Source: Vitrella brassicaformis CCMP3155
Taxonomy: Eukaryota; Protista; Chromerida
Direction of reading: 5' to 3'
Length of the DNA: 64,000 nucleotides
NCBI GenBank assembly: GCA_001179505.1
Contig: CDMY01000531.1
Span: forward strand, 287,130-351,129
Position numbers and translations under genes: made by a program. This document shows, one piece after another, positions 1 through 11,140 of the stretch. Position 1 is the first letter of the stretch, and the number at the start of each line of letters is the position of its first letter. The notes below the pieces were generated by a model, which made no database searches, was not told the DNA's origin, and saw only the letters and a list, made by a program, of their open reading frames with translations.

Positions 1-134
1 AGGAGAGAAGGAGAGACAGAAAAATAGCCAGCCAGCACTGGCAAGCCGGCCGGCTCTGCTCTGCTCTCGACGTCCTCCCCCTCCCTACGTACACACCGCA
101 CCGCCCCCGCCACGGCAGCCCGATACGATCTGTG

Positions 135-3100
135 CTACTTCCCCGCCCCCAGCCATGAAGCCATCCACCCTGACTGCTGCTGCCGTTGCTGGGCACTGTC
201 GCCCTTCGGCGCCTCAAGGACGATGTTGTCCACAAGCCGACAGGAAGGGCCCACCGACGCACCTGACACGACACAGAAACGCCACGCCCACCACACACGT
301 GCAGAGAGAGAACATCCGCCGTGGTCTGCCTGCGTGTGTTCTGTTCCTTACCGATAGCGACGCAGTAGCTCTTTGTGGGCTGCAGCACGTCGGCTGCCTT
401 GCCCGTGTAAAGGTCGCACACAGTGATGTAGTCCACAGACAGACCGTGAGACGCCGCAAACACCCGCCCAGCCTCAGTCAGCACCCCGGCGTCCCGCTCT
501 CCACGCCGGTGCTGCGCCTCGACGGCCTGCAGCGTCTGGTAGATGAGCGGCGCCCTCTTCCTCTCCTCCGGGGTGAGCCGTGCGTTGCGTGATGCGAAGG
601 CCAGGCCGTCCTTCTCGCGGACCGTCGGCACCACTGCCACCTGCAGCAGAGAAAGAGGAGATGGGATGGAGCCATGGATTGAGGGAGGGAGGGAGGGGGA
701 ATGGGGTTACCTCGACGTCAGGGAAGAACTCGGCGCACAGTTTGCGCACGATGACGGTCTGTAGGAAGTCCTTCTGGCCAAACACGACCACCGATGGCCT
801 GCGGACACACGAGAGAAGACAATTCAGCGACGTGTGCAGAGCGTCCTCTCACTTGCCCTTGCTCACCTTGTCCATGCGAAGAACTTCGTCAGGACGGTTC
901 CAATGCCCCGGAAGAAGCTGAGTGAGACCAGCAGATTGACGTGTGTGCCCCCTTTCGGCCATCCATCTGTATCCCTCGTCGCTCACACACTCACCCAGGT
1001 CGTTCCTTGCCCTCTCCGTCGACCGCCTCGATGCCGGCGAAGTCCACACGCGCCGGGAAGCTGTCCTCTGTGTGTGTGCAGAGACAAAGAAAGGGGCCAT
1101 TCCACTCCATCCGCTGCGCTGCATGGTGATAATCCATCCGTACCAGCTGTGGGGTATATGTCCTGCACATTCGGGGTGAAGATGACCTCGACATTCCTGT
1201 CCCTCAGCTTGGCGATGTCCTCATCCAGACGCATTGGGTAGGTCTCAAAATCCTGCACAACCACCAACACACAAAGCATGACAGCAGGAGCGATGCGGCG
1301 TAGACAGAGGCTCGCGAGGCAGCACGGACCTTGGCCGACTGGAACTGCAGCTGGTTGAGGAAGAGGCTCGTCCACACACGGTCACCGCGACGAGACGCCT
1401 CGTCAAGCTGACGGATCGCCCCAGACATCCATCCATCCAGACTGCATGAATGAATCCCTTGGAACCAACCCTTTTCTCCCCAGCTCACCAGTGCCATGTG
1501 CCCGTCGTGCAGGCCACCTAGGAAGGGCACGAACGCCACACGAGCCGACGCTGGCAGGGTGGACCGCACACCCATCAGCTCACTGGGTGTCTTGCACACA
1601 CGAGTGGCCATCGGTGGGCTGGTGGCCGCGGCTGTGGGTGCGAGGGCTGCATGGGTCTCCTTTGCCGCTGTTGGCTGTGGTGGTAGTGGTGGGGATGCTG
1701 GTGCTGGTGGGGTGGTCTGCCGCTGTTCCTCGAGCGCTTTGATCAGGTGGACGAGCATCTCGTTGACGGGCGCAGAGAGGCCGACCTTCCGCGCCTCAGA
1801 CGCGATGGCGCCACAAATCGCCGAAATCTCGGTGGGGAGCCTGAAACAGATATACACCCATCCCATAGGAAGTCCATCTGCCTTGTCGTGTTCTCCATCC
1901 ACCACCCACCTCATCCACCACCCACCTGTTCTCCACATCAGTGCGCATCGATGACGTGTTCGCGGCCGTGGTTTCAGCGGCCCTCTGCACCACCTTGACG
2001 AGATTCGACCCCTCGGGCAGCCGGATGCCTCGCGCGCGGCCTACCTCAGAGACCTGAACAGACCAGGAAAGGTGCGTGCGTGTGTGCGTTGGAATACTCT
2101 CGGGCGTAGGTGGCGGTGGGGGGTACCAACCTCCTGTGCGATTTGGGAGATGAGGGGCTCGAAGTGAGGCCGTGTGAGAGCACCGTTGTTGACGCCATAC
2201 AACGCCGTCAGGGGATTCACGACGGCTGACACACACAGGCGACAACACAAGTTGAACATGGGGATGCCAAGGAAAGGCTGGCTGCTCACCATTGATGGCC
2301 AACTTGTGCCAGATGGTCTCCAGCACATCTTGCGACCGCACCGTGCGCGTCGTCAAAGCCGCCGCGTTCAACAGATCCCTCACCCGCTCCACACACGCCT
2401 CGTCCTTCCTCTCCGCCGCCCCGATGACCGTCTCGCCCTCCCCCATCCGCCACACACGGCCCTCGTCCCCGGCACGCACAAGCGCCCCATTGGTGGTGGT
2501 GCCCAGCAGCAGCTTCGGGCCGTCGCGGCCTTTGAAGGCCTTCTTCAGCTCTAGCGGCGCGTCGAGGCCGTTCTGCAGGGAGAGGACGCAGCCGTCGGGC
2601 CTCACAGCCCTCCTGGCGAGCTTGGCCGCCCGTTCGGTGTCGGCGCTTTTGATCAGGATGATGGCGAGGTCGAAGGCGCCTTGTGGTAGGGTGGTGTCGT
2701 CAGTGACGACGTCCAGGGTGACGGGCGGGCCGTGGGGATTGCCCAAGGGGTCCACACACGACAGACCGCCGCCAGAAGAGATCGCACTCGCTGAGGAGAG
2801 ACACAATTCCATATATGTGAGCGATGGTGCGGTATTTTCTCGGTGGGCTGACCTTGCTGTTGCCACCGCGTCGCGACGGTGACGGCTACATCCCCCTTGG
2901 TGGCGAGCATGTAGGCCACAAGTGACGCCATGCCCCCCGAACCGATCACCAACACCCTCTTCAACCCACCAGCCACCATGCCACCAACACCAGACGCAGA
3001 TAAGGCCGGCTCACCCCCCTGATCAACCACAACATCAGCCGGAGACAGTGGCTCGCCCTCTGTCCATCGGATGAAGGCGTCCCTCTCGCCGGGATCCATC

Positions 3101-4642
3101 AAGAACGAGTTGTGCTGCGGGTGGGGGAAGGTCTCCCGCTCCACTGCTGTGGCGTACTCCTCGACTGCTTTGGCGGTCTGCCGCCAGCCGTCGCCAAAGC
3201 GCCTGACGAACTTGAGGGAGAGGGAGCCGGGCGACTGCAGGCCCAATACGTCATGCCACACCAACACCTGCCCGTCACAGTGAGGCCCTGCAGTGCACAC
3301 GAACAAACACACAGAGAGGGAGGGGGATGCGTGTGTGGAGGGCTTTGCGTTTGTCTGTGTGTGGACCTGCGCCAATGCCGATGGTCGGGATGGTGAGTCT
3401 GCGTGAGATCTCTTCAGCAACCTCTGAGCACACCTTCTCCAGGACGATCATGCAGCAGCCGGCAGCCTCGAGCGCCTGCGCCTCCTCGACCAAATACTGC
3501 ACCCACCCATACACAACATCAGCCACCCAGACAGCACAGCACCTCTGGTTGCGAGTGCCGCCACTTGATGTGCCCTGGTCTCTACCTGGGCATCTTTGGC
3601 CGTCTTGCCCCTCGCAAGGAAGTTCTCGGCCGTCTGCGGCAGCACACCCGTGTGGCCCACGACCGGCGTCAGCTGACTCACGGCCTGCATACACCAACAG
3701 ACAGACAGCCACACGGGAGTCTTGATCCCTCCCTCATATCATTGTATAGGTGGGCAGTTTACCTTGATTTGCTCGTACATGGGTCCCTCGATCTTGACGG
3801 CGGCCACGCCGCCCTCGTTGACGAAGCGAATGGCGTTTTGGACGGCCCTGTCGACGGTGCTGTAGCTGCCGAATGGCATGTCGCCGATGACGAAACACCG
3901 CGAGTTGCCGCGGGTGACTGACTTGCAGTGATATAGCATCTCGTCCATGCCGATCTGAAGATGAGATGAATGATGGACCACCAGAGCTGCTGTGAATGGG
4001 GTTTTCCTCTGGTTTGGTTTGGTTTGGTTTGTGCAGCGTCAGTCACCTGGTTGGTGCGTGCGTGTCCGAGCACCACGTTGGCCAGCGAGTCGCCCACAAG
4101 GATGCAATCCAGCACTGATGGACAAGAAAACAACAAAACGCGCCCTCTCATCAGCACGCCCGTTGAAAGACCAGCTCTCCAACTGCCGCCTACTTGCAGA
4201 ATTGGCCACTTGTGCGCCGATGAAGTCATACGCTGCAGGCAGGCAGGCAGGATAAGAACAACACAACACACACACGGGGATGGATGCCGTCCGCCCGATG
4301 CATCAGATCTGATGCTTACACATGCAGACACACAGACAGTTTTCCTCTCTCACCGGTGATGACGGTGATCTTCCTCCTCTCCTTCTTCTTCCGCAGCAGA
4401 TCTCTCATCTTCAGCGACTTGACACCGCCGCCGCCACTCGCATACAACGTCCGCACACCGCCCATTCGCCGCCAATCATCACTCATGGGCGGCATCCGGC
4501 TTACCGCTGCCGGCGGTCTCGCCACGCACAGGCTGTGCAGCGCCATCCGGCTGACCGGCAGCGCACCTGACGCCCTGGCTGCCGCCTGGCTGACTAGAGA
4601 CCGACTTGAGGACAGAACTCGATGAACACTCAGTCCTTTCAT
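135..4642 (-). CDS. panB-panE-panC: Trifunctional pantothenate biosynthesis protein: ketopantoate hydroxymethyltransferase + ketopantoate reductase + pantoate-beta-alanine ligase, with a mitochondrial-type presequence
   Basis: Manual GT-AG splicing gives one frame from ATG 4642 to TAG 135. PanB motifs: TAYD, VGDSL, DMPFGSY, VKIEG, GHTGVLPQ, GIGAG, DGQVLV. PanE motifs: VLVIGSGG, QNGL, WHKLAIN, NPLTAL, SSMRTD, PTEI. PanC motifs: FVPFLGGLHDGH, RPGFFRG, FGQKD, REKDGLAFASRN, RLVDN. Confidence 0.92.
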
Positions 4643-4920
4643 CTTTCAACTCGGCGATGACTTGCGGATCCGAGTACGGCCTCCATGATGCTCACGCTGA
4701 CGCGGTGACGGGACAAACAGGGAGATCGCGCACAGCTAAGCTCGCAGCCTTCCTCAAGCTCGCATTTGGCGGCGCATGGAGAGAGGGTCGCGGGTAGCGT
4801 CTGTGTAGTGGCTCGGCAGCAATGTTTGCCGAGCGCTGATTCAGCTTGCCTCTACCTCGCGCGACTCTCGTGGGAAGCGTTGCCGTGAAGGCCGGCGAGG
4901 CGCCGCGGGATCAGATCCCC
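4643..4920. promoter_or_regulatory. Bidirectional promoter region with two AGCTCGCA motifs
   Basis: Lies between divergent ATGs; motif at 4739 and 4757. Confidence 0.5.
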
Positions 4921-7591
4921 ATGGCCGAGGTGATGGATGCCGTCCGTCCCTCCACCCCCACCCCCACCCCCCACCCCAGATCCTCCCTCCCCCTCTCCGC
5001 CACCTTCCCCGCCAGCAACCTCGATTTTACGCTGCCGCCGCAGCACCACCACCTGCACACAACGGCCAAGACCGTCACGCGCATGCCCGTCATTATCAAC
5101 CAGCAGACGACCGCTTCATCGGCCCTGCCGCAGTGCGATGGTGACGACGGCTCGTGTGTGGCCTCGCCGAGGTCGCAAGGCGAGGACCAGGCCGCTCCGA
5201 AGACGGTGCGGCGTGTGGCAGACCTGTTTTGGGGCATTCGGGGGAGGCAGAGGGAGGGGGAGAGGAAGGGCGCCAAGGCGGCCAGCGAGGCGCATCATGT
5301 TTCAGAAGAACGTAAGGAGAGATGAGATGGAACACAACACAACAAAATGATGGATGGATGCATGCCTGCCTGCCTGTTTGTCTGTTTGTTTGTCAGGTGT
5401 GCGGGGGGATTTCGATGCTGCGGATGCATGGTTGCGGCGTGAGCTTGACGTGGGCCACATCGTGCCGGTCGGTGCCCTGACGATGCTCAAGAAGCCAAGG
5501 GGATGCAACGCATTCACCTCGGTGAGCAAAGCGCTGACCATGATCAGCCAGCCAGCCACCCCGTCGCCCGCGCCTCGGTGTGTCTGCGTTTGCAGGTCCA
5601 GCGTGCAACCCTCGAATGGCAGTATGTCGATATCATATGGATTGACGCAAGAGGTGCGTTGACGTGACGTGCGACACACTCATACACAAGAAGCCATCGG
5701 TCGCTTCCATCCATCCATCCATCCACTCATTTATAATGTCCTGCAGCTCTATCGAGGCACCGTCACTCGTACATGCGGACGCCCGCGCTGATGGAGCTGC
5801 TGGACAACGGCATCTTCAACCTCAGAAACGCCGGCACAGCCATCGCAGTGCCCTTCAGGGGCGTCGTGTGCAGCTATCCACGGATCGGTATCATCACAGA
5901 GGCGCAGGGAATGCCGCTCGCTAAGGTAGGGAATCAGCCACACCTCTCACACGAGAGATGTGCATCTGTGTGTGTGTGTGTGTGTGGTGTTGACAGTTTC
6001 TGCGTGAGTATCCTGACGTGATTCGGGTTGAGGAGCACCGTTGGTCGATCATGGAGCAGCTGGCCAGGGCGGTGGAGAGCCTGCACTGCCGCAAGACGCC
6101 CATCATGCACAGAGACATCTCAGAGCACACCGTCATGCTCCAATGGGTCAGCCAAATCAGCCAGCCCGCCACTCCGACCAAAGCATAGACACCAACACGC
6201 CCCTCCCTCTCTCTCTCGCTCAACACATCAGGAGTATGAGGTGGTTCACCAGACGCCCACGTACATGGATCTGAAGCCCCGTGTCCGCCTGCGTCTGTCG
6301 CACTTCCTCTACTCGAGCGAGGTGTCGGCCACCAGCTGCATAGACGACCCCCCCACCGGCCCTTGTCTGCACTACATGGCGCCGGAGGAGATCGTCGTGC
6401 CGTCAAGACACACCAGAATGGTATGTATTGTATGTATGTGGCGGGCTGGGGAAACAAACGGGAGGGATGACTCTCTCTGTGTTTGTTGTGTGGCTGTGGG
6501 TGTAGGCGTGTCTGAAGTCTGATGTGTGGCGGGTGATGCTCATATTCCGGCTGCTGCACGGCCTGCACCTCAACACAAAGGTCAGTCAGTCTGACGTCGA
6601 TAGCCATCCATCCATCCATCTGTCTGTCTCTACACGCGTGGTGTGCGTCTGTCCCTCTCCCTCAATCGGTCAATTGGTCAGGATGCGGCCGACGAGTATG
6701 ATTTGTGGGCCGAGCTGTGTCGACTGGTGCCGGTGCGTTACGGCAAGCAGGAGGCCGAGTACATCACGCCGCTGCCCAAGATGATCAACGCCATGTCATC
6801 CCTCCTACCCGAATACAGATGGAACTCATCTCAGGTACGTGAGCCCTTTTCTCCACACGTCACCCCTTCCACGCCCACACCCACACCCCTCTCGCTCTCT
6901 CTGTGTGCGTCACACACATACTAACAGGTGTTGAGTGTGCTGCATCGGCCAGCGACGGCCTACAGCCTGCCGCACGCGCCGTCGGGTCTCCTGAGGAGCG
7001 TCCCGGACACCTCCACCCCCTACCCGCGATATGACCCCGTGGTGCAGAAGCTCAACCCTCCGGCGCACTTCCTGGGCGGCAGTGACGTCAAGCAGCCGTG
7101 CATTCTCATTGTGCCCCACTTCGGGAGAGTCTGGTCAGTAGATAGATAAAACGGAGAGTGGGCGGCAGTGGAGAAATGCTCATGTCCATGTCCATGTGTG
7201 TGGTGTGTGCAGGGGCACGTTGTCTCCCTCCGAGTATTGCGACATCTGCCTGACGCCCTGCTCGCCCATCCCGCCGCCGAACGAGTCGTGCTGCCTCTCG
7301 TGCGGCTGCACACACGTGCCCACCAAGATGCCCCTCTACAGCGGCCATCACGCAGCCGCCGGGCCCACCCTCACCCGTCTGCGCGCCCCGCCGGCCCTTC
7401 CCCAGGGCATGCCGCCCCCCTTCTACTACCCCTCGGTGCACGGACATGCACCTGCACCCCCAGCCATGCTGCCCTATTATCCCTACTACCCGCCCTCTTC
7501 GTTGGGTGGGTATGGCTGTGGCTATGGGTATGGGTACCCCCACTACCTGGATCATGTCATGTACGGCGGTAACAGAGAGGCGGGGGCGTGA
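4921..7591 (+). CDS. Protein-kinase-like protein, probably a pseudokinase, with a C-terminal Cys cluster and Pro/Tyr-rich tail
   Basis: Spliced exons give MHRDISEHT, LSHF at the DFG position, YMAPE and SDVW, followed by YCDIC...CLSC. Stop at 7591. Confidence 0.7.
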
Positions 7592-7783
7592 CGGGACTTG
7601 AGAGATGGGTGCTGGCTCGCGAGTGGGTGCGGGGTGGCTGGGTGGGACGGTGTGGTGGCATGGGTGTTTTTTGCCATACACATGCGTTCATTGGGGGATC
7701 GATGGCTGGATGGATGGATGGACTGACGGATTGATGTCGTGCTGGTGCTGTGGTTTGTAAGGGCTCTCTCCCTGGCTCTGTGC

Positions 7784-7885
7784 GTGCCGTCACTGCTAGA
7801 ATCTTTCTTTCGCAATTGACTCGCTAACGGGCCACTTTCCGGGGGCGAGCGAGCTGCGAAGGAGAGATTCTAGCAGTGATGGTGC
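7784..7885 (+). ncRNA. Long RNA hairpin (pre-miRNA-like or 3'-UTR structure)
   Basis: 7784-7814 pairs with 7855-7885 over 31 consecutive positions (26 Watson-Crick + 5 G.U). An inner helix pairs 7820-7825 with 7848-7853. Confidence 0.5.
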
Positions 7886-8269
7886 AGGTGCCAGGCAGGC
7901 CCTCGTTCCGTGCTTTTATCCAAAGAATGCATGTGTGGGCCCCTGTGGCCCTCTATCTCCCCGCTCTCTGCCGTGGGCGGTTCCAAGTTACTTTTATTTC
8001 AGCTCCCTTTGTGTGCCTCTTATCCACATGTATGTCTGTGCGGACAATTAACGACAGAACACAGCGCGAGTGTCTTTATGCGAAACGAGATGAGTAAGTC
8101 CATCCTGCCTGCCTGCCTGCCTGCCTGTCTCTTTCTTCATTCATGTGTACACTAACTATGGCGAGTGGCCGGCGGGCTGGTCGTCTTGACCGTCCTGATG
8201 CGTGGATGGATGGATGAGTGGTGTGAGGAATGCATGCACGACTGCACATTTTTCCCGTGCTGCCCCCCC

Positions 8270-8569
8270 NNNNNNNNNNNNNNNNNNNNNNNNNNNNNNN
8301 NNNNNNNNNNNNNNNNNNNNNNNNNNNNNNNNNNNNNNNNNNNNNNNNNNNNNNNNNNNNNNNNNNNNNNNNNNNNNNNNNNNNNNNNNNNNNNNNNNNN
8401 NNNNNNNNNNNNNNNNNNNNNNNNNNNNNNNNNNNNNNNNNNNNNNNNNNNNNNNNNNNNNNNNNNNNNNNNNNNNNNNNNNNNNNNNNNNNNNNNNNNN
8501 NNNNNNNNNNNNNNNNNNNNNNNNNNNNNNNNNNNNNNNNNNNNNNNNNNNNNNNNNNNNNNNNNNNNN
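8270..8569. other. Assembly gap (300 N)
   Basis: Run of N; gaps of the same length at 13153-13452, 14086-14385, 30511-30810 and 55875-56174. Confidence 0.99.
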
Positions 8570-9336
8570 CCCCCCCCCCCCCCCCCCCCCTGTCGATGAA
8601 TGCAATGCACCAAGTGCAGCAGAGGTCCGTCGCTGCGCGACAATCACACACCGACAGTTCACTCAACACAAATGGACAGACCAGCCCCTGACGAGCTGTC
8701 TGTCTGAGCTCGACACCTACTGCTGAACCAGATTAAAGCCAGCCCGCCAGCCGGTCAGTCGTCTCGAGGAACATCGCCAATGACGGCCTTCCACGTACCT
8801 GCACATACACAAACACAGAGAGAGAGAGAGATGTGTGTGTGGTGTGTCGTGTGCGTACCGCCATATGTTTGGGATGAGGGCATGGCCATGCCGTCGCTGC
8901 CGACAGTCGCATGGCGAGAGCTGTCAGCACCACACACTGACGGCAACACAAGCGACACACTGCAGATAGCACCGCTGTTCCTGTCCGGCCGTTGCAATGC
9001 ACGTCCAATGTCTCGCCGCGCTTGGGCAGTGAGTGCGTCGACGCGACGCCTTCTCCGTCTCATTCAGGGCATTTCGCAGAGGTCGTGTGGGCGGAGAGCG
9101 TCTGCATTCGTTATTATCCGTTCGGTCGCCGCGAGAAGAGTTCGCGTTTCTCGACGAAAGGAGACGGGAGACGGGAGACGGACCTTCTTTGAGAAGTTAT
9201 TGATTTCTCAGACAGCGCCTCTCATTTGACATTCGTTCAATCCTCCTGCGCATCGCCCTCAGCTCGCAGCAAACGGCTGACCGTTGAGGAGTGAGAGAGA
9301 GCAAACAGCAGCGACATGCTGTCAGCGTCCTTCGCC

Positions 9337-10568
9337 TATGTATGTCTACAGCACAGCAGCAGCAGCGCGACAGCAAGAGCCCGTCGGCACGGATCAGGTT
9401 CAGCCGTCCCCTGGCCAGCCGTGCCATTTCACGACAGCGACACCAACAGCACACCAAGACCGTGACCCACCCCGTCGGCACGGATCACCGGCAGACCTCC
9501 CCTGCCCAGCCGTGCCACAAACAAGACCACCGCCAGTGCCACCACACACACCAACGGCGGCCAAGACGACTGGGCTTCGTCTGCTGACCACCGCGGCAGA
9601 GTGCCTTGCGGGAGAGGGCCGTAGAGACCGTGGCTGAGGAGCCGGATGAGGTGTGCGCCGACGTGGGCGAGGAGGAGCCGAGCATCCTCCCCCTGCCGCA
9701 CCTCAGCAACACGGCCGCCACACGCCTCCCCGACCACCGCGGCGCCAGCGAGGCCGGCAGCAGTTTAGACGCCGCGGGAGCACCAAGCCCGTCAGCAAAG
9801 AGGGAGGGAGAGGGTGAGGGTGAGTGGGAGGAGGGCGATGAGTGGCTGGCCGACTTGGGCGAGGAGGAGACCCCCATCAGCCACCCTCTGTGCAGCAGCA
9901 GCACTCTTAGCATCGCCACTCGGGACGGAGCGGGCTCTACGGCCGATGATAGCAAATCGCAGCAAGGTAAGTGACGGACTGTCTGGTCAGTCAGTCAGTG
10001 TGATTGGTTGATGGTCATGAGTGAAACTGTCGTATGTGTGTTGGCTCTGCGCTGCGTTCCGTTGCTCTCTCTATGTGCAGGTCTGTCAGTGGCCGAGCCG
10101 TGTGACGAAGGACCCCCTCCCGCCCCTATCCTCGCACCTGCACCACCCGCCATCCTGCGCCTGAAGAGCGGTGCCGAAGTAGAGCTCCGAGTCAAGCTCG
10201 GCGAGGGCACTCGCGGCAAGGTGATGGCCGGCGTGGTCAACGAGCGATGGATGGCCTTCAAGATGGCCATCAGGGGGGCGGGCAGCCGGACCATCTGCGA
10301 GGAGATGGAGGCCGAGAGGGCCACGATGGAGAGGCTGCAGCAGCGGAAGAGGGAGAGGGGCGAGATGGGCCTGTTTCTCGACATCTACGTCTACGCGGGT
10401 CCCTCGGACGGCGCCACGTTCCGCGCCAGCCCCTCTGAGCCGCCGCAGGAGGTGGCAGCACCATGGACGACGCTGACTACGACGAGTGTGGCCTCATCGG
10501 CCATCGCTGTCTACGTTTTATATTCCGTAGTCCTTTTGATTCATGTCTCGCGTCGATGTGTCGGCTAG
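9337..10568 (+). pseudogene. Chimeric/truncated kinase-family copy: shared acidic low-complexity exon 1 plus a different kinase N-lobe, no C-lobe
   Basis: Exon 1 matches the other copies. Exon 2 reads KLGEGTRGKVMAG...MAFKMA...EEMEAE, then runs into the shared VAAPWTTL 3' module. No HxD or DFG motif. Confidence 0.6.
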
Positions 10569-10589
10569 TTCGCAGCGTGGGAGTGACCT

Positions 10590-11140
10590 ACGGGAGGGAA
10601 AATAATTGCTTGATCAATCGCCCACCCATGTGAGGACCAGCGGCACGAACGTGTAGCCCTTCTGCCGACAGTTGGCACCGTACTTGCGGTCCTTGTCCCG
10701 TTCTACACAAAATACAAAGATAGACAATGACGAGTGCACTTCTGACCCTCTCCCTCCCTGTCTCTCCGTTGTGTTGTGTTCGCTGCTCACCGAAGTCCCA
10801 CTGGCTTTGGTTCTTCCGCCATTTGCAGCGATTCCCAGCGGACAGATGTGCACACACACAAATGACACACGGGCGCCCATAGCCACGGCAGGACGCTGCA
10901 GTGCTCTGCATCGACAGATCTATCTGGCCAGTCTTGCAGTGATCGAGCCATCGCAGCACACCATGCGTCTGAGTGCCGTCATGTCGGCCGGGGAGGGTGG
11001 TCAGAGGCGACAGCACACCCAGTAGGTCACCCTCTGCACAGCATGCAGTCCTTGATGCCGGCCGGCCGTTGCAATGCAGGTCCACAGCCTCGCCGCGTTT
11101 CGGCAGTGAGTGCGTCGACGCGACACCTTCTCCGTCTCAT
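10590..11140 (-). pseudogene. Fragment resembling the restriction-like (PD-(D/E)xK) endonuclease of RLE-type non-LTR retroelements, apparently intron-containing
   Basis: Minus-strand translation gives GQIDLSMQSTAAS ... WDF|ERDKDRKYGANCRQKGYTFVPLVLTW, with a GT-AG intron at about 10704-10790. Confidence 0.45.

What the first reader, a model, noticed from the sequence alone, without database searches (positions are those of the whole stretch)
135..4642. Three pantothenate-pathway enzymes (PanB, PanE, PanC) in one mitochondrion-targeted polypeptide
Seen: both domain junctions lie inside single exons. PanB to PanE is within 3287-2853 (DGQVLVWHD...LKRVLVIGSGG) and PanE to PanC is within 1840-1489 (PTEISAICG...RVAFVPFLGGLHDGH), so the fusion does not depend on my splicing across those junctions. 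The N-terminus is Arg/Ser/Ala-rich and acid-poor. Known: these three enzymes take ketoisovalerate to pantothenate in this order, they are normally separate, and Toxoplasma has a PanB-PanE fusion with a separate ligase. Inferred: a channelling megaenzyme that may be ancestral to the coccidian arrangement. I cannot verify whether it has already been reported.
Basis: partly seen in the sequence, partly recalled or inferred. Interest (0 to 1): 0.75.

Follow-up and report, generated by a model that had tools for sequence, protein, structure and literature searches.

The report
Known three-enzyme vitamin B5 fusion gene
The alga Vitrella brassicaformis really does encode the three enzymes that make pantothenate (vitamin B5) as one protein, but this gene is already annotated and was reported as "trifunctional" in 2021-2022, and the same fusion also occurs in other protists.

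Summary
On the minus strand, 135-4642, lies an 18-exon gene whose 17 introns are all GT-AG. Its single reading frame carries PanB (KPHMT), PanE (KPR) and PanC (PBAL) in that order. Both domain junctions sit inside single exons (3287-2853 and 1840-1489).

My splice model, from residue 60 on, is identical to the public protein CEM20945.1 / A0A0G4FZ92 (Vbra_16581, 988 aa) of Vitrella brassicaformis CCMP3155.

The fusion is not new. Lunghi et al. 2022 (Supplementary Data 1) list Vbra_16581 and Chromera Cvel_3471 as "trifunctional", and de Vries et al. 2021 say so in their text.

What I add:
- It is the only PanB and PanC locus found in this genome.
- A 92%-identical environmental relative keeps exons 11-18 free of indels, with mostly synonymous change.
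- The residues I take as catalytic are retained in all three domains.
- The same B-E-C order occurs in two choanoflagellates, the amoebozoan Stygamoeba and at least seven unnamed environmental sequence clusters.
- Chromerid PanB and PanC both group with foraminiferan PanB-PanC fusions, and PanB also groups with apicomplexan PanB-PanE.

The 59-residue presequence rests on a start codon upstream of the annotated one. It is unverified.

The parts
135..4642 (-). Whole gene (maximal CDS), 18 exons: 4642-4354, 4232-4194, 4114-4047, 3954-3763, 3684-3586, 3496-3367, 3287-2853, 2790-2290, 2225-2131, 2053-1926, 1840-1489, 1407-1330, 1252-1144, 1067-995, 917-867, 798-711, 640-352, 262-135
   Evidence: all 17 introns are GT-AG, the CDS is 3144 nt with no internal stop and encodes 1047 aa; residues 60-1047 are identical to public protein P0001 (CEM20945.1).
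3121..4411 (-). PanB / KPHMT domain (model aa 78-328), spread over exons 1-7
   Evidence: PF02548 scores 297 bits over profile positions 3-258 of 259 on P0001. The PDB match to 1oy0 scores 173 bits. The model has pLDDT above 90 over most of this domain.
1729..2955 (-). PanE / KPR domain (model aa 384-696), exons 7-11
   Evidence: PF02558 scores 78 bits and PF08546 122 bits. The PDB match to 5ayv scores 94.7 bits. Invariant columns G329, G331, N432, K521 and E604 are listed.
219..1599 (-). PanC / PBAL domain (model aa 740-1020), exons 11-18
   Evidence: PF02569 scores 237.6 bits over profile positions 2-268 of 268. E. coli PanC 1iho aligns at 195 bits over aa 696-963. Motif table.
2853..3287 (-). 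Exon 7: PanB-to-PanE junction inside one exon
   Evidence: The same open frame hits the PanB profile at 189-258 and the ApbA profile at 1-32.
1489..1840 (-). Exon 11: PanE-to-PanC junction inside one exon
   Evidence: The same frame hits ApbA_C at 90-125 and PanC at 2-43. In the relative L009 it is 95.9% identical with no indel.
2971..3036 (-). Linker 1 (P0001 aa 298-319), predicted disordered
   Evidence: pLDDT is below 50. There is no Pfam match between PanB and ApbA.
1615..1701 (-). Linker 2 (P0001 aa 647-675), Pro/Ala-rich, predicted disordered
   Evidence: pLDDT is below 50. It lies between the ApbA_C and PanC matches.
1408..1488 (-). Intron 11: 81 nt, in frame and stop-free, yet an intron
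   Evidence: PDB PanC chains align contiguously across it, chain residues 45 to 46. The relative L009 has lost 25 nt here, which would shift the frame if it were read through. It is absent from P0001.
4466..4642 (-).
   Evidence: Net charge is +7 and the first acidic residue is at position 55. An in-frame TGA lies two codons upstream. The codon-usage score is -2.2, against 5 to 44 for true CDS chunks. No homologue was found.
4463..4465 (-). Annotated start codon (Met60 of the maximal ORF)
   Evidence: P0001 begins here.
4639..4686 (-). Short upstream ORF of 15 codons whose TGA overlaps ATG 4642
   Evidence: Read directly from the sequence. It matters only if the 5' UTR reaches this far.

Best explanation
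This is the nuclear gene Vbra_16581 of Vitrella brassicaformis. One spliced mRNA encodes one polypeptide of 988-1047 residues. The polypeptide holds three separately folded catalytic domains joined by two disordered linkers of roughly 20-30 residues. PanB (KPHMT) makes ketopantoate from ketoisovalerate. PanE (KPR) reduces ketopantoate to pantoate using NADPH. PanC (PBAL) ligates pantoate to beta-alanine using ATP. No second PanB or PanC was found in the genome, so this protein is the alga's route to pantothenate. Shown here: the gene structure, the domain order, retention of the residues I take as catalytic, purifying selection on the PanC half, and orthology with Chromera Cvel_3471. Inferred: the three activities, any benefit from co-localisation or fixed 1:1:1 stoichiometry, and the compartment.
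For: Exon model and open frame. Identity to public CEM20945.1, named Vitrella brassicaformis CCMP3155 on a contig of 351129 bases. Full-length Pfam matches in the order B, E, C. PDB matches to all three enzymes. Near-invariant PanB and PanE columns. PanC signature residues kept. PanB and PanC families hit only this locus in the 72.7-Mb assembly. This agrees with Lunghi Supplementary Data 1. In the relative L009, exons 11-18 have no indels while 6 of 7 introns do, codon-position differences are 10/5/26, changed codons are 26 synonymous to 13 nonsynonymous, and there are no stops. The AF2 model has mean pLDDT 84.4 with three confident domains, low-confidence linkers and pTM 0.42.
Against: No transcript of this gene could be reached with the tools. 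A single mRNA is therefore supported only by the annotation, the exon-internal junctions and transcript-derived homologues in other species. The start codon is unresolved. No enzymatic data exist for any triple fusion. PanC carries lineage-specific changes next to the HxGH motif and in the SSRN motif.
Confidence: 0.9

Rival explanations
1. The protein starts at ATG 4642 and carries a cleavable mitochondrial presequence, so the whole pathway from ketoisovalerate to pantothenate runs in the mitochondrion.
For: The extension has 8 R, 1 K, 0 E, 11 S and 9 A, with no acidic residue before position 55 and no hydrophobic signal-peptide core. Relatives carry 37-236-residue, net-positive extensions before PanB. 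Toxoplasma KPHMT-KPR is mitochondrial by experiment. GC3 is high over codons 17-40.
Against: The public model starts at Met60. The codon-usage score of the 59 codons is -2.2, which is like flanking DNA and below every true CDS chunk. An open 59-codon stretch has roughly 15% chance odds at this GC content (my estimate). The annotated Chromera orthologue has only a short, slightly acidic N-terminus. Toxoplasma PBAL is nuclear, not mitochondrial. No homologue or transcript of exon 1 was found.
Confidence: 0.4
2. The triple fusion is an annotation artefact: neighbouring genes were merged by a gene predictor, or the mRNA is processed into separate products.
For: No transcript evidence could be retrieved here.
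Against: Both junctions lie inside exons, with no stop and no splice needed. Chromera has the same order. Transcript-derived proteins of Stygamoeba and Salpingoeca infusionum, and environmental contigs barely longer than their ORFs, carry all three domains. Exon 11 is conserved without indels in L009.
Confidence: 0.04
3. The PanC domain is a degenerate, non-catalytic module, and pantothenate is salvaged or made otherwise.
For: Unusual residues at several conserved PanC positions: the two residues before the glycine of the HxGH motif, the proline of NPxQF, the histidine of PGHF, and the first serine of SSRN.
Against: The residues I recall as essential by mutagenesis in M. tuberculosis PanC (two His, Asn, Gln, Lys, Gln) are all present, as are Asp and Arg. 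The His-to-Phe change is common in the eukaryote-type clade. The PFLGG variant is shared with foraminiferan enzymes. Synonymous changes outnumber nonsynonymous ones two to one. It is the only PanC found in the genome.
Confidence: 0.06

Closest known systems
Vbra_16581 / Cvel_3471, the 'trifunctional' KPHMT-KPR-PBAL ORFs of chromerids (Lunghi et al. 2022, PMC8764084, Supplementary Data 1; de Vries et al. 2021, PMC8717973)
   Same: It is the same gene: residues 60-1047 of my model equal the public protein. Chromera has the same domain order, with 56%, 37% and 45% identity in PanB, PanE and PanC.
   Different: Only the proposed start codon differs (59 extra residues). The review says Vitrella also has KPHMT as a single gene. 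The genome scan and the paper's own table show only extra KPR-like genes.
Toxoplasma gondii bifunctional KPHMT-KPR (TGME49_257050) plus separate PBAL (TGME49_265870)
   Same: PanB-PanE fused in the same order. PanB falls in one 100/100 clade with the chromerid proteins. The Toxoplasma enzyme is mitochondrial.
   Different: Coccidia have no PanC domain on that protein. Their PBAL is a separate nuclear-localised protein, and I could not place it in a tree.
Triple PanB-PanE-PanC proteins of Salpingoeca rosetta, S. infusionum and Stygamoeba regulata, and of environmental contigs
   Same: Same four Pfam domains in the same order, at 900-1250 residues.
   Different: They lie outside the chromerid/apicomplexan/foraminiferan PanB clade and are interleaved with PanB-PanE proteins. 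Identity is 31-45% per domain.
Foraminiferan PanB-PanC bifunctional proteins (Ammonia sp., Bolivina argentea, Tara Oceans transcripts)
   Same: They are the nearest relatives of both the PanB and the PanC domains of the chromerid protein (99-100 support in both trees). They share the PFLGG variant.
   Different: They lack the PanE domain between the two.

Membership tests
Ketopantoate hydroxymethyltransferase (PanB, PF02548) | Full-length match to the family profile above the curated cut-off | tested here: met
   297 bits against a cut-off of 28.7, profile positions 3-258 of 259. Exon-wise NCBIfam panB hits.
Ketopantoate hydroxymethyltransferase (PanB, PF02548) | Metal-binding and catalytic acidic and lysine residues. 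Their identity is from my knowledge of the E. coli and M. tuberculosis structures. | tested here: met
   D59, S60, D98, K127, E129, H148 and E190 of P0001 are at least 90% conserved across 27 fused proteins. Mapping them to catalytic roles is from memory, not tested.
Ketopantoate reductase (PanE/ApbA, PF02558 + PF08546) | N-terminal Rossmann domain with a glycine-rich loop, plus the helical C-terminal domain | tested here: met
   78 and 122 bits. G329, G331 and G334 are conserved. The fold has pLDDT above 90.
Ketopantoate reductase (PanE/ApbA, PF02558 + PF08546) | Catalytic Lys and Glu and the substrate-binding Asn and Ser (roles from my knowledge of E. coli KPR) | tested here: met
   K521, E604, N432 and S592 are invariant in the alignment.
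Pantoate-beta-alanine ligase (PanC, PF02569) | Full-length profile match and the HxGH, NxxQF, GxKDxxQ and SRN signatures | tested here: met
   237.6 bits and 195 bits to 1iho. All signature residues are present, with lineage-specific neighbours.
Chromerid trifunctional KPHMT-KPR-PBAL | All three domains in one ORF in the order B-E-C, orthologous to Cvel_3471 | tested here: met
   Vitrella and Chromera are sisters at 95/90 in the PanB tree, 89 in PanC and 85 in PanE.
Any of the three enzymes | Measured catalytic activity | not testable with these tools
   No biochemical data exist for this protein. I found none in the literature held.

The most novel reading that the evidence does not exclude
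The B-E-C architecture is old. It was present at least in the common ancestor of alveolates and rhizarians, and possibly much earlier in eukaryotes. It has been taken apart repeatedly: apicomplexans detached or replaced PanC, foraminifera deleted PanE from the middle, and many lineages kept only PanB-PanE. The papers I could search describe the triple fusion only for the two chromerids.
Probability: 0.4. Interest if true: 0.4.

Novelty: already known. Interest (0 to 1): 0.22.

Why it matters
The gene itself is a confirmed, already published annotation, so it adds no new kind of system. Its value is as a natural three-step fusion enzyme for a vitamin pathway that is a drug target in coccidian parasites. 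A free-living, culturable relative carrying all steps on one chain is a convenient source for biochemistry and structure. The wider distribution found here gives a tractable case of repeated domain fusion and fission in a short pathway. It covers choanoflagellates, an amoebozoan, and foraminiferan PanB-PanC relatives that share history in both flanking domains. The held literature does not seem to discuss it.

Tried and rejected
I redid it with numeric coordinates only.
- Look-up of contigs encoding P0001 found nothing on record.
- A word search with exon 1 (window:4355-4642:-) for transcripts or relatives of the N-terminal extension gave no hit.
- Codon-usage and four-fold GC3 tests of the extension were inconclusive. 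The score is like flanking DNA, but the undoubted coding linkers also have low GC3.
- The Cardiosporidium PanB-PanE protein has a roughly 200-residue tail and is named a ligase in NCBI. BLASTP and Pfam show no PanC similarity, so it is not a fourth alveolate triple fusion.
- Pfam scans of eight neighbouring ORFs (5305-11085) matched no family.
- Coccidian and Perkinsus PBAL sequences could not be fetched by reference, so their place in the PanC tree is untested.
- I sent no hand-joined spliced protein to any search or fold tool. Searches were done exon by exon by reference until the public protein P0001 came back. The joined model was used only locally, for frame and identity checks. The extension joined to the rest was never searched as one protein.
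Full report
**What is there.** The window is G000:C531:287130-351129 of a 72.7-Mb, 1064-contig assembly. Its protein from this locus is held publicly as CEM20945.1 / UniProt A0A0G4FZ92, named Vitrella brassicaformis CCMP3155, on a contig of 351129 bases.

Pfam scans of the raw minus-strand open frames between 477 and 4331 give colinear pieces of PanB, ApbA, ApbA_C and PanC. Two frames each carry the end of one enzyme and the start of the next. NCBIfam agrees exon by exon.

Reading the sequence, I set 18 exons numerically. A script confirmed the following:
- All 17 introns are GT-AG and 62-121 nt long.
- The CDS is 3144 nt with no internal stop.
- It runs from ATG 4642 to the TAG at 137-135.

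Intron 11 is 81 nt, in frame and stop-free, but it is a true intron. Solved PanC chains align straight across it. A close relative has lost 25 nt of it.

**Identity with the public model.** A library-wide HMMER search used exon 11 plus exon 12 by reference. It returned only 11 proteins at E up to 0.001. The best was a 988-residue protein at 99% identity. Residues 60-1047 of my model equal that protein exactly. My splicing is therefore the public annotation, and only the start codon differs.

On that protein, Pfam gives PanB at 19-269, ApbA at 325-485, ApbA_C at 513-637 and PanC at 681-961. PDB searches match all three enzymes: 1oy0 at 173 bits, 5ayv at 94.7 bits and 1iho at 195 bits.

An AlphaFold2 model built on 27 fused relatives has mean pLDDT 84.4. 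It shows three confident domains, low-confidence linkers at 298-319 and 647-675, and pTM 0.42. This is a beads-on-a-string layout with no defined domain packing.

**Is it functional?**
- In the alignment of fused proteins, the PanB positions D59, S60, D98, K127, E129, H148 and E190 are near-invariant, and so are the PanE positions G329, G331, N432, K521, S592 and E604. Their catalytic roles are from my knowledge of the E. coli enzymes.
- PanC keeps both histidines of HxGH, the Asn and Gln of NxxQF, the Lys, Asp and Gln of GxKDxxQ, and the Arg of SRN. It has unusual neighbouring residues.
- The PFLGG variant is shared with Chromera and foraminiferan enzymes. The His-to-Phe change in PGHF is common among eukaryote-type PanC. 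Only the Ser-to-Ala change in SSRN is chromerid-specific.
- An ENA metagenome contig (L009, ERZ893784) is about 92% identical to window 64-1830. There, exons 11-18 have no indels and are 96.5% identical. Introns are 91.7% identical, and six of seven carry indels. Differences by codon position are 10/5/26. Synonymous changed codons outnumber nonsynonymous ones 26 to 13.
- Six-frame scans of the whole assembly find PanB and PanC only at this locus. ApbA matches at two further loci.

**Already reported.** De Vries et al. 2021 (PMC8717973) state that Vitrella and Chromera contain one trifunctional ORF comprising KPHMT, KPR and PBAL. They also state that Perkinsus has a KPHMT-KPR fusion.

Lunghi et al. 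2022 (PMC8764084), Supplementary Data 1, lists Vbra_16581 (trifunctional), Vbra_12688 and Vbra_19192 (KPR), and Cvel_3471 (trifunctional). A supplementary alignment includes both chromerid proteins. That table matches my genome scans. The review's wording that Vitrella also has a single-gene KPHMT does not match them. Toxoplasma KPHMT-KPR is mitochondrial and its PBAL is nuclear.

**Wider distribution.** Word searches with the public protein, followed by Pfam and BLAST domain mapping, found the following:
- 14 proteins have the order B-E-C. They are Vitrella, Chromera, Salpingoeca rosetta (genome annotation), S. infusionum and Stygamoeba regulata (transcriptomes), and environmental sequences from at least seven 90%-identity clusters.
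- Several of the environmental contigs are barely longer than their ORF, as mRNA-derived contigs would be.
- 24 are PanB-PanE proteins. They include coccidia, Cardiosporidium, Capsaspora, Acrasis and Flectonema.
- Many are PanB-PanC proteins, from bacteria and from the foraminifera Ammonia and Bolivina.
- Two are PanE-PanC proteins.
- I found no paper in the held library that discusses the triple fusion outside chromerids. That is not proof that none exists.

**Trees.**
- PanB: chromerid B-E-C, apicomplexan B-E and foraminiferan-type B-C form one clade. Support is SH-aLRT 99 in the quick tree and 100/100 in a careful IQ-TREE run. The chromerid-plus-apicomplexan node inside it has only 55/54.
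- PanC: chromerids and the same foraminiferan-type proteins form a clade at 100. All triple proteins fall in a eukaryote-type clade at 95.
- PanE: this domain evolves fast. The PanE domains of all B-E and B-E-C proteins and of one of the two E-C proteins form a clade at 96, apart from one stand-alone protein and the other E-C protein. Chromerids and apicomplexans sit in the same clade of 19 at 97, unresolved.
- The architecture labels need six to eight changes for B-E-C on these trees, so domains were gained or lost repeatedly. The trees are unrooted and cannot tell gain from loss.
- PanB and PanC have congruent histories in chromerids and foraminifera. That fits an ancestor that already carried both, and makes a triple-domain ancestor of the apicomplexan arrangement plausible. 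Without coccidian PBAL in the tree this remains inference.

**The N-terminus.** ATG 4642 is the first possible start, because an in-frame TGA lies two codons upstream. The public model starts at Met60 (4465).

For the extension:
- The 59 extra residues are presequence-like in composition.
- Relatives have net-positive extensions of 37-236 residues.

Against it, or inconclusive:
- Their codon-usage score is -2.2. True CDS chunks score 5 to 44, and the upstream flank has a median of -1.8.
- Four-fold GC3 is 0.66 against 0.76 (p = 0.17), and the coding linkers are lower still.
- No homologue or transcript of exon 1 was found.

The start codon, and with it the compartment, stays open.

**Verdict.** This is a real and correctly read gene that is already annotated and published as trifunctional. 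The modest additions are selection evidence, residue checks, sole-copy status, and a broader, patchy distribution with congruent PanB and PanC history.

Noticed in passing
L009:1-2302 (ENA ERZ893784, k147_91810), aligned to window 64-1830: A metagenome contig about 92% identical to this Vitrella locus, introns included. This is evidently a close but distinct Vitrella-like lineage in an environmental sample.
   Followed up: partly
G000:C897:209346-209579 (L006) and G000:C289:111795-111920 (L008): Two further ApbA/KPR-family loci elsewhere in the genome. They probably correspond to the Vbra_12688 and Vbra_19192 'KPR' entries of Lunghi et al. Their substrate is unknown.
   Followed up: no
window 4639-4686, minus strand: A 15-codon upstream ORF whose stop codon overlaps ATG 4642 (ATGA). 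It would be relevant to translation only if the 5' UTR extends that far.
   Followed up: no
P0016, P0021, P0015, P0019 (Ammonia sp., Bolivina argentea, Tara MERC transcripts): Foraminiferan-type PanB-PanC fusions are the closest relatives of both flanking domains of the chromerid protein. This looks like a triple protein with the middle enzyme removed, or the reverse.
   Followed up: partly
P0025 (Cardiosporidium cionae, 942 aa): It is named pantoate-beta-alanine ligase in NCBI, but it carries only PanB and PanE plus a roughly 200-residue tail with no PanC similarity. The name is probably wrong.
   Followed up: yes
PMC8717973, section on pantothenate biosynthesis: The review says Vitrella has KPHMT as a single gene as well. 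The genome scan and the primary paper's table show a stand-alone KPHMT only for Chromera (Cvel_2832), not for Vitrella.
   Followed up: yes
window 5305-11085, both strands: Eight ORFs of 125-232 codons upstream of the gene match no Pfam family. The upstream neighbour gene was not identified.
   Followed up: partly
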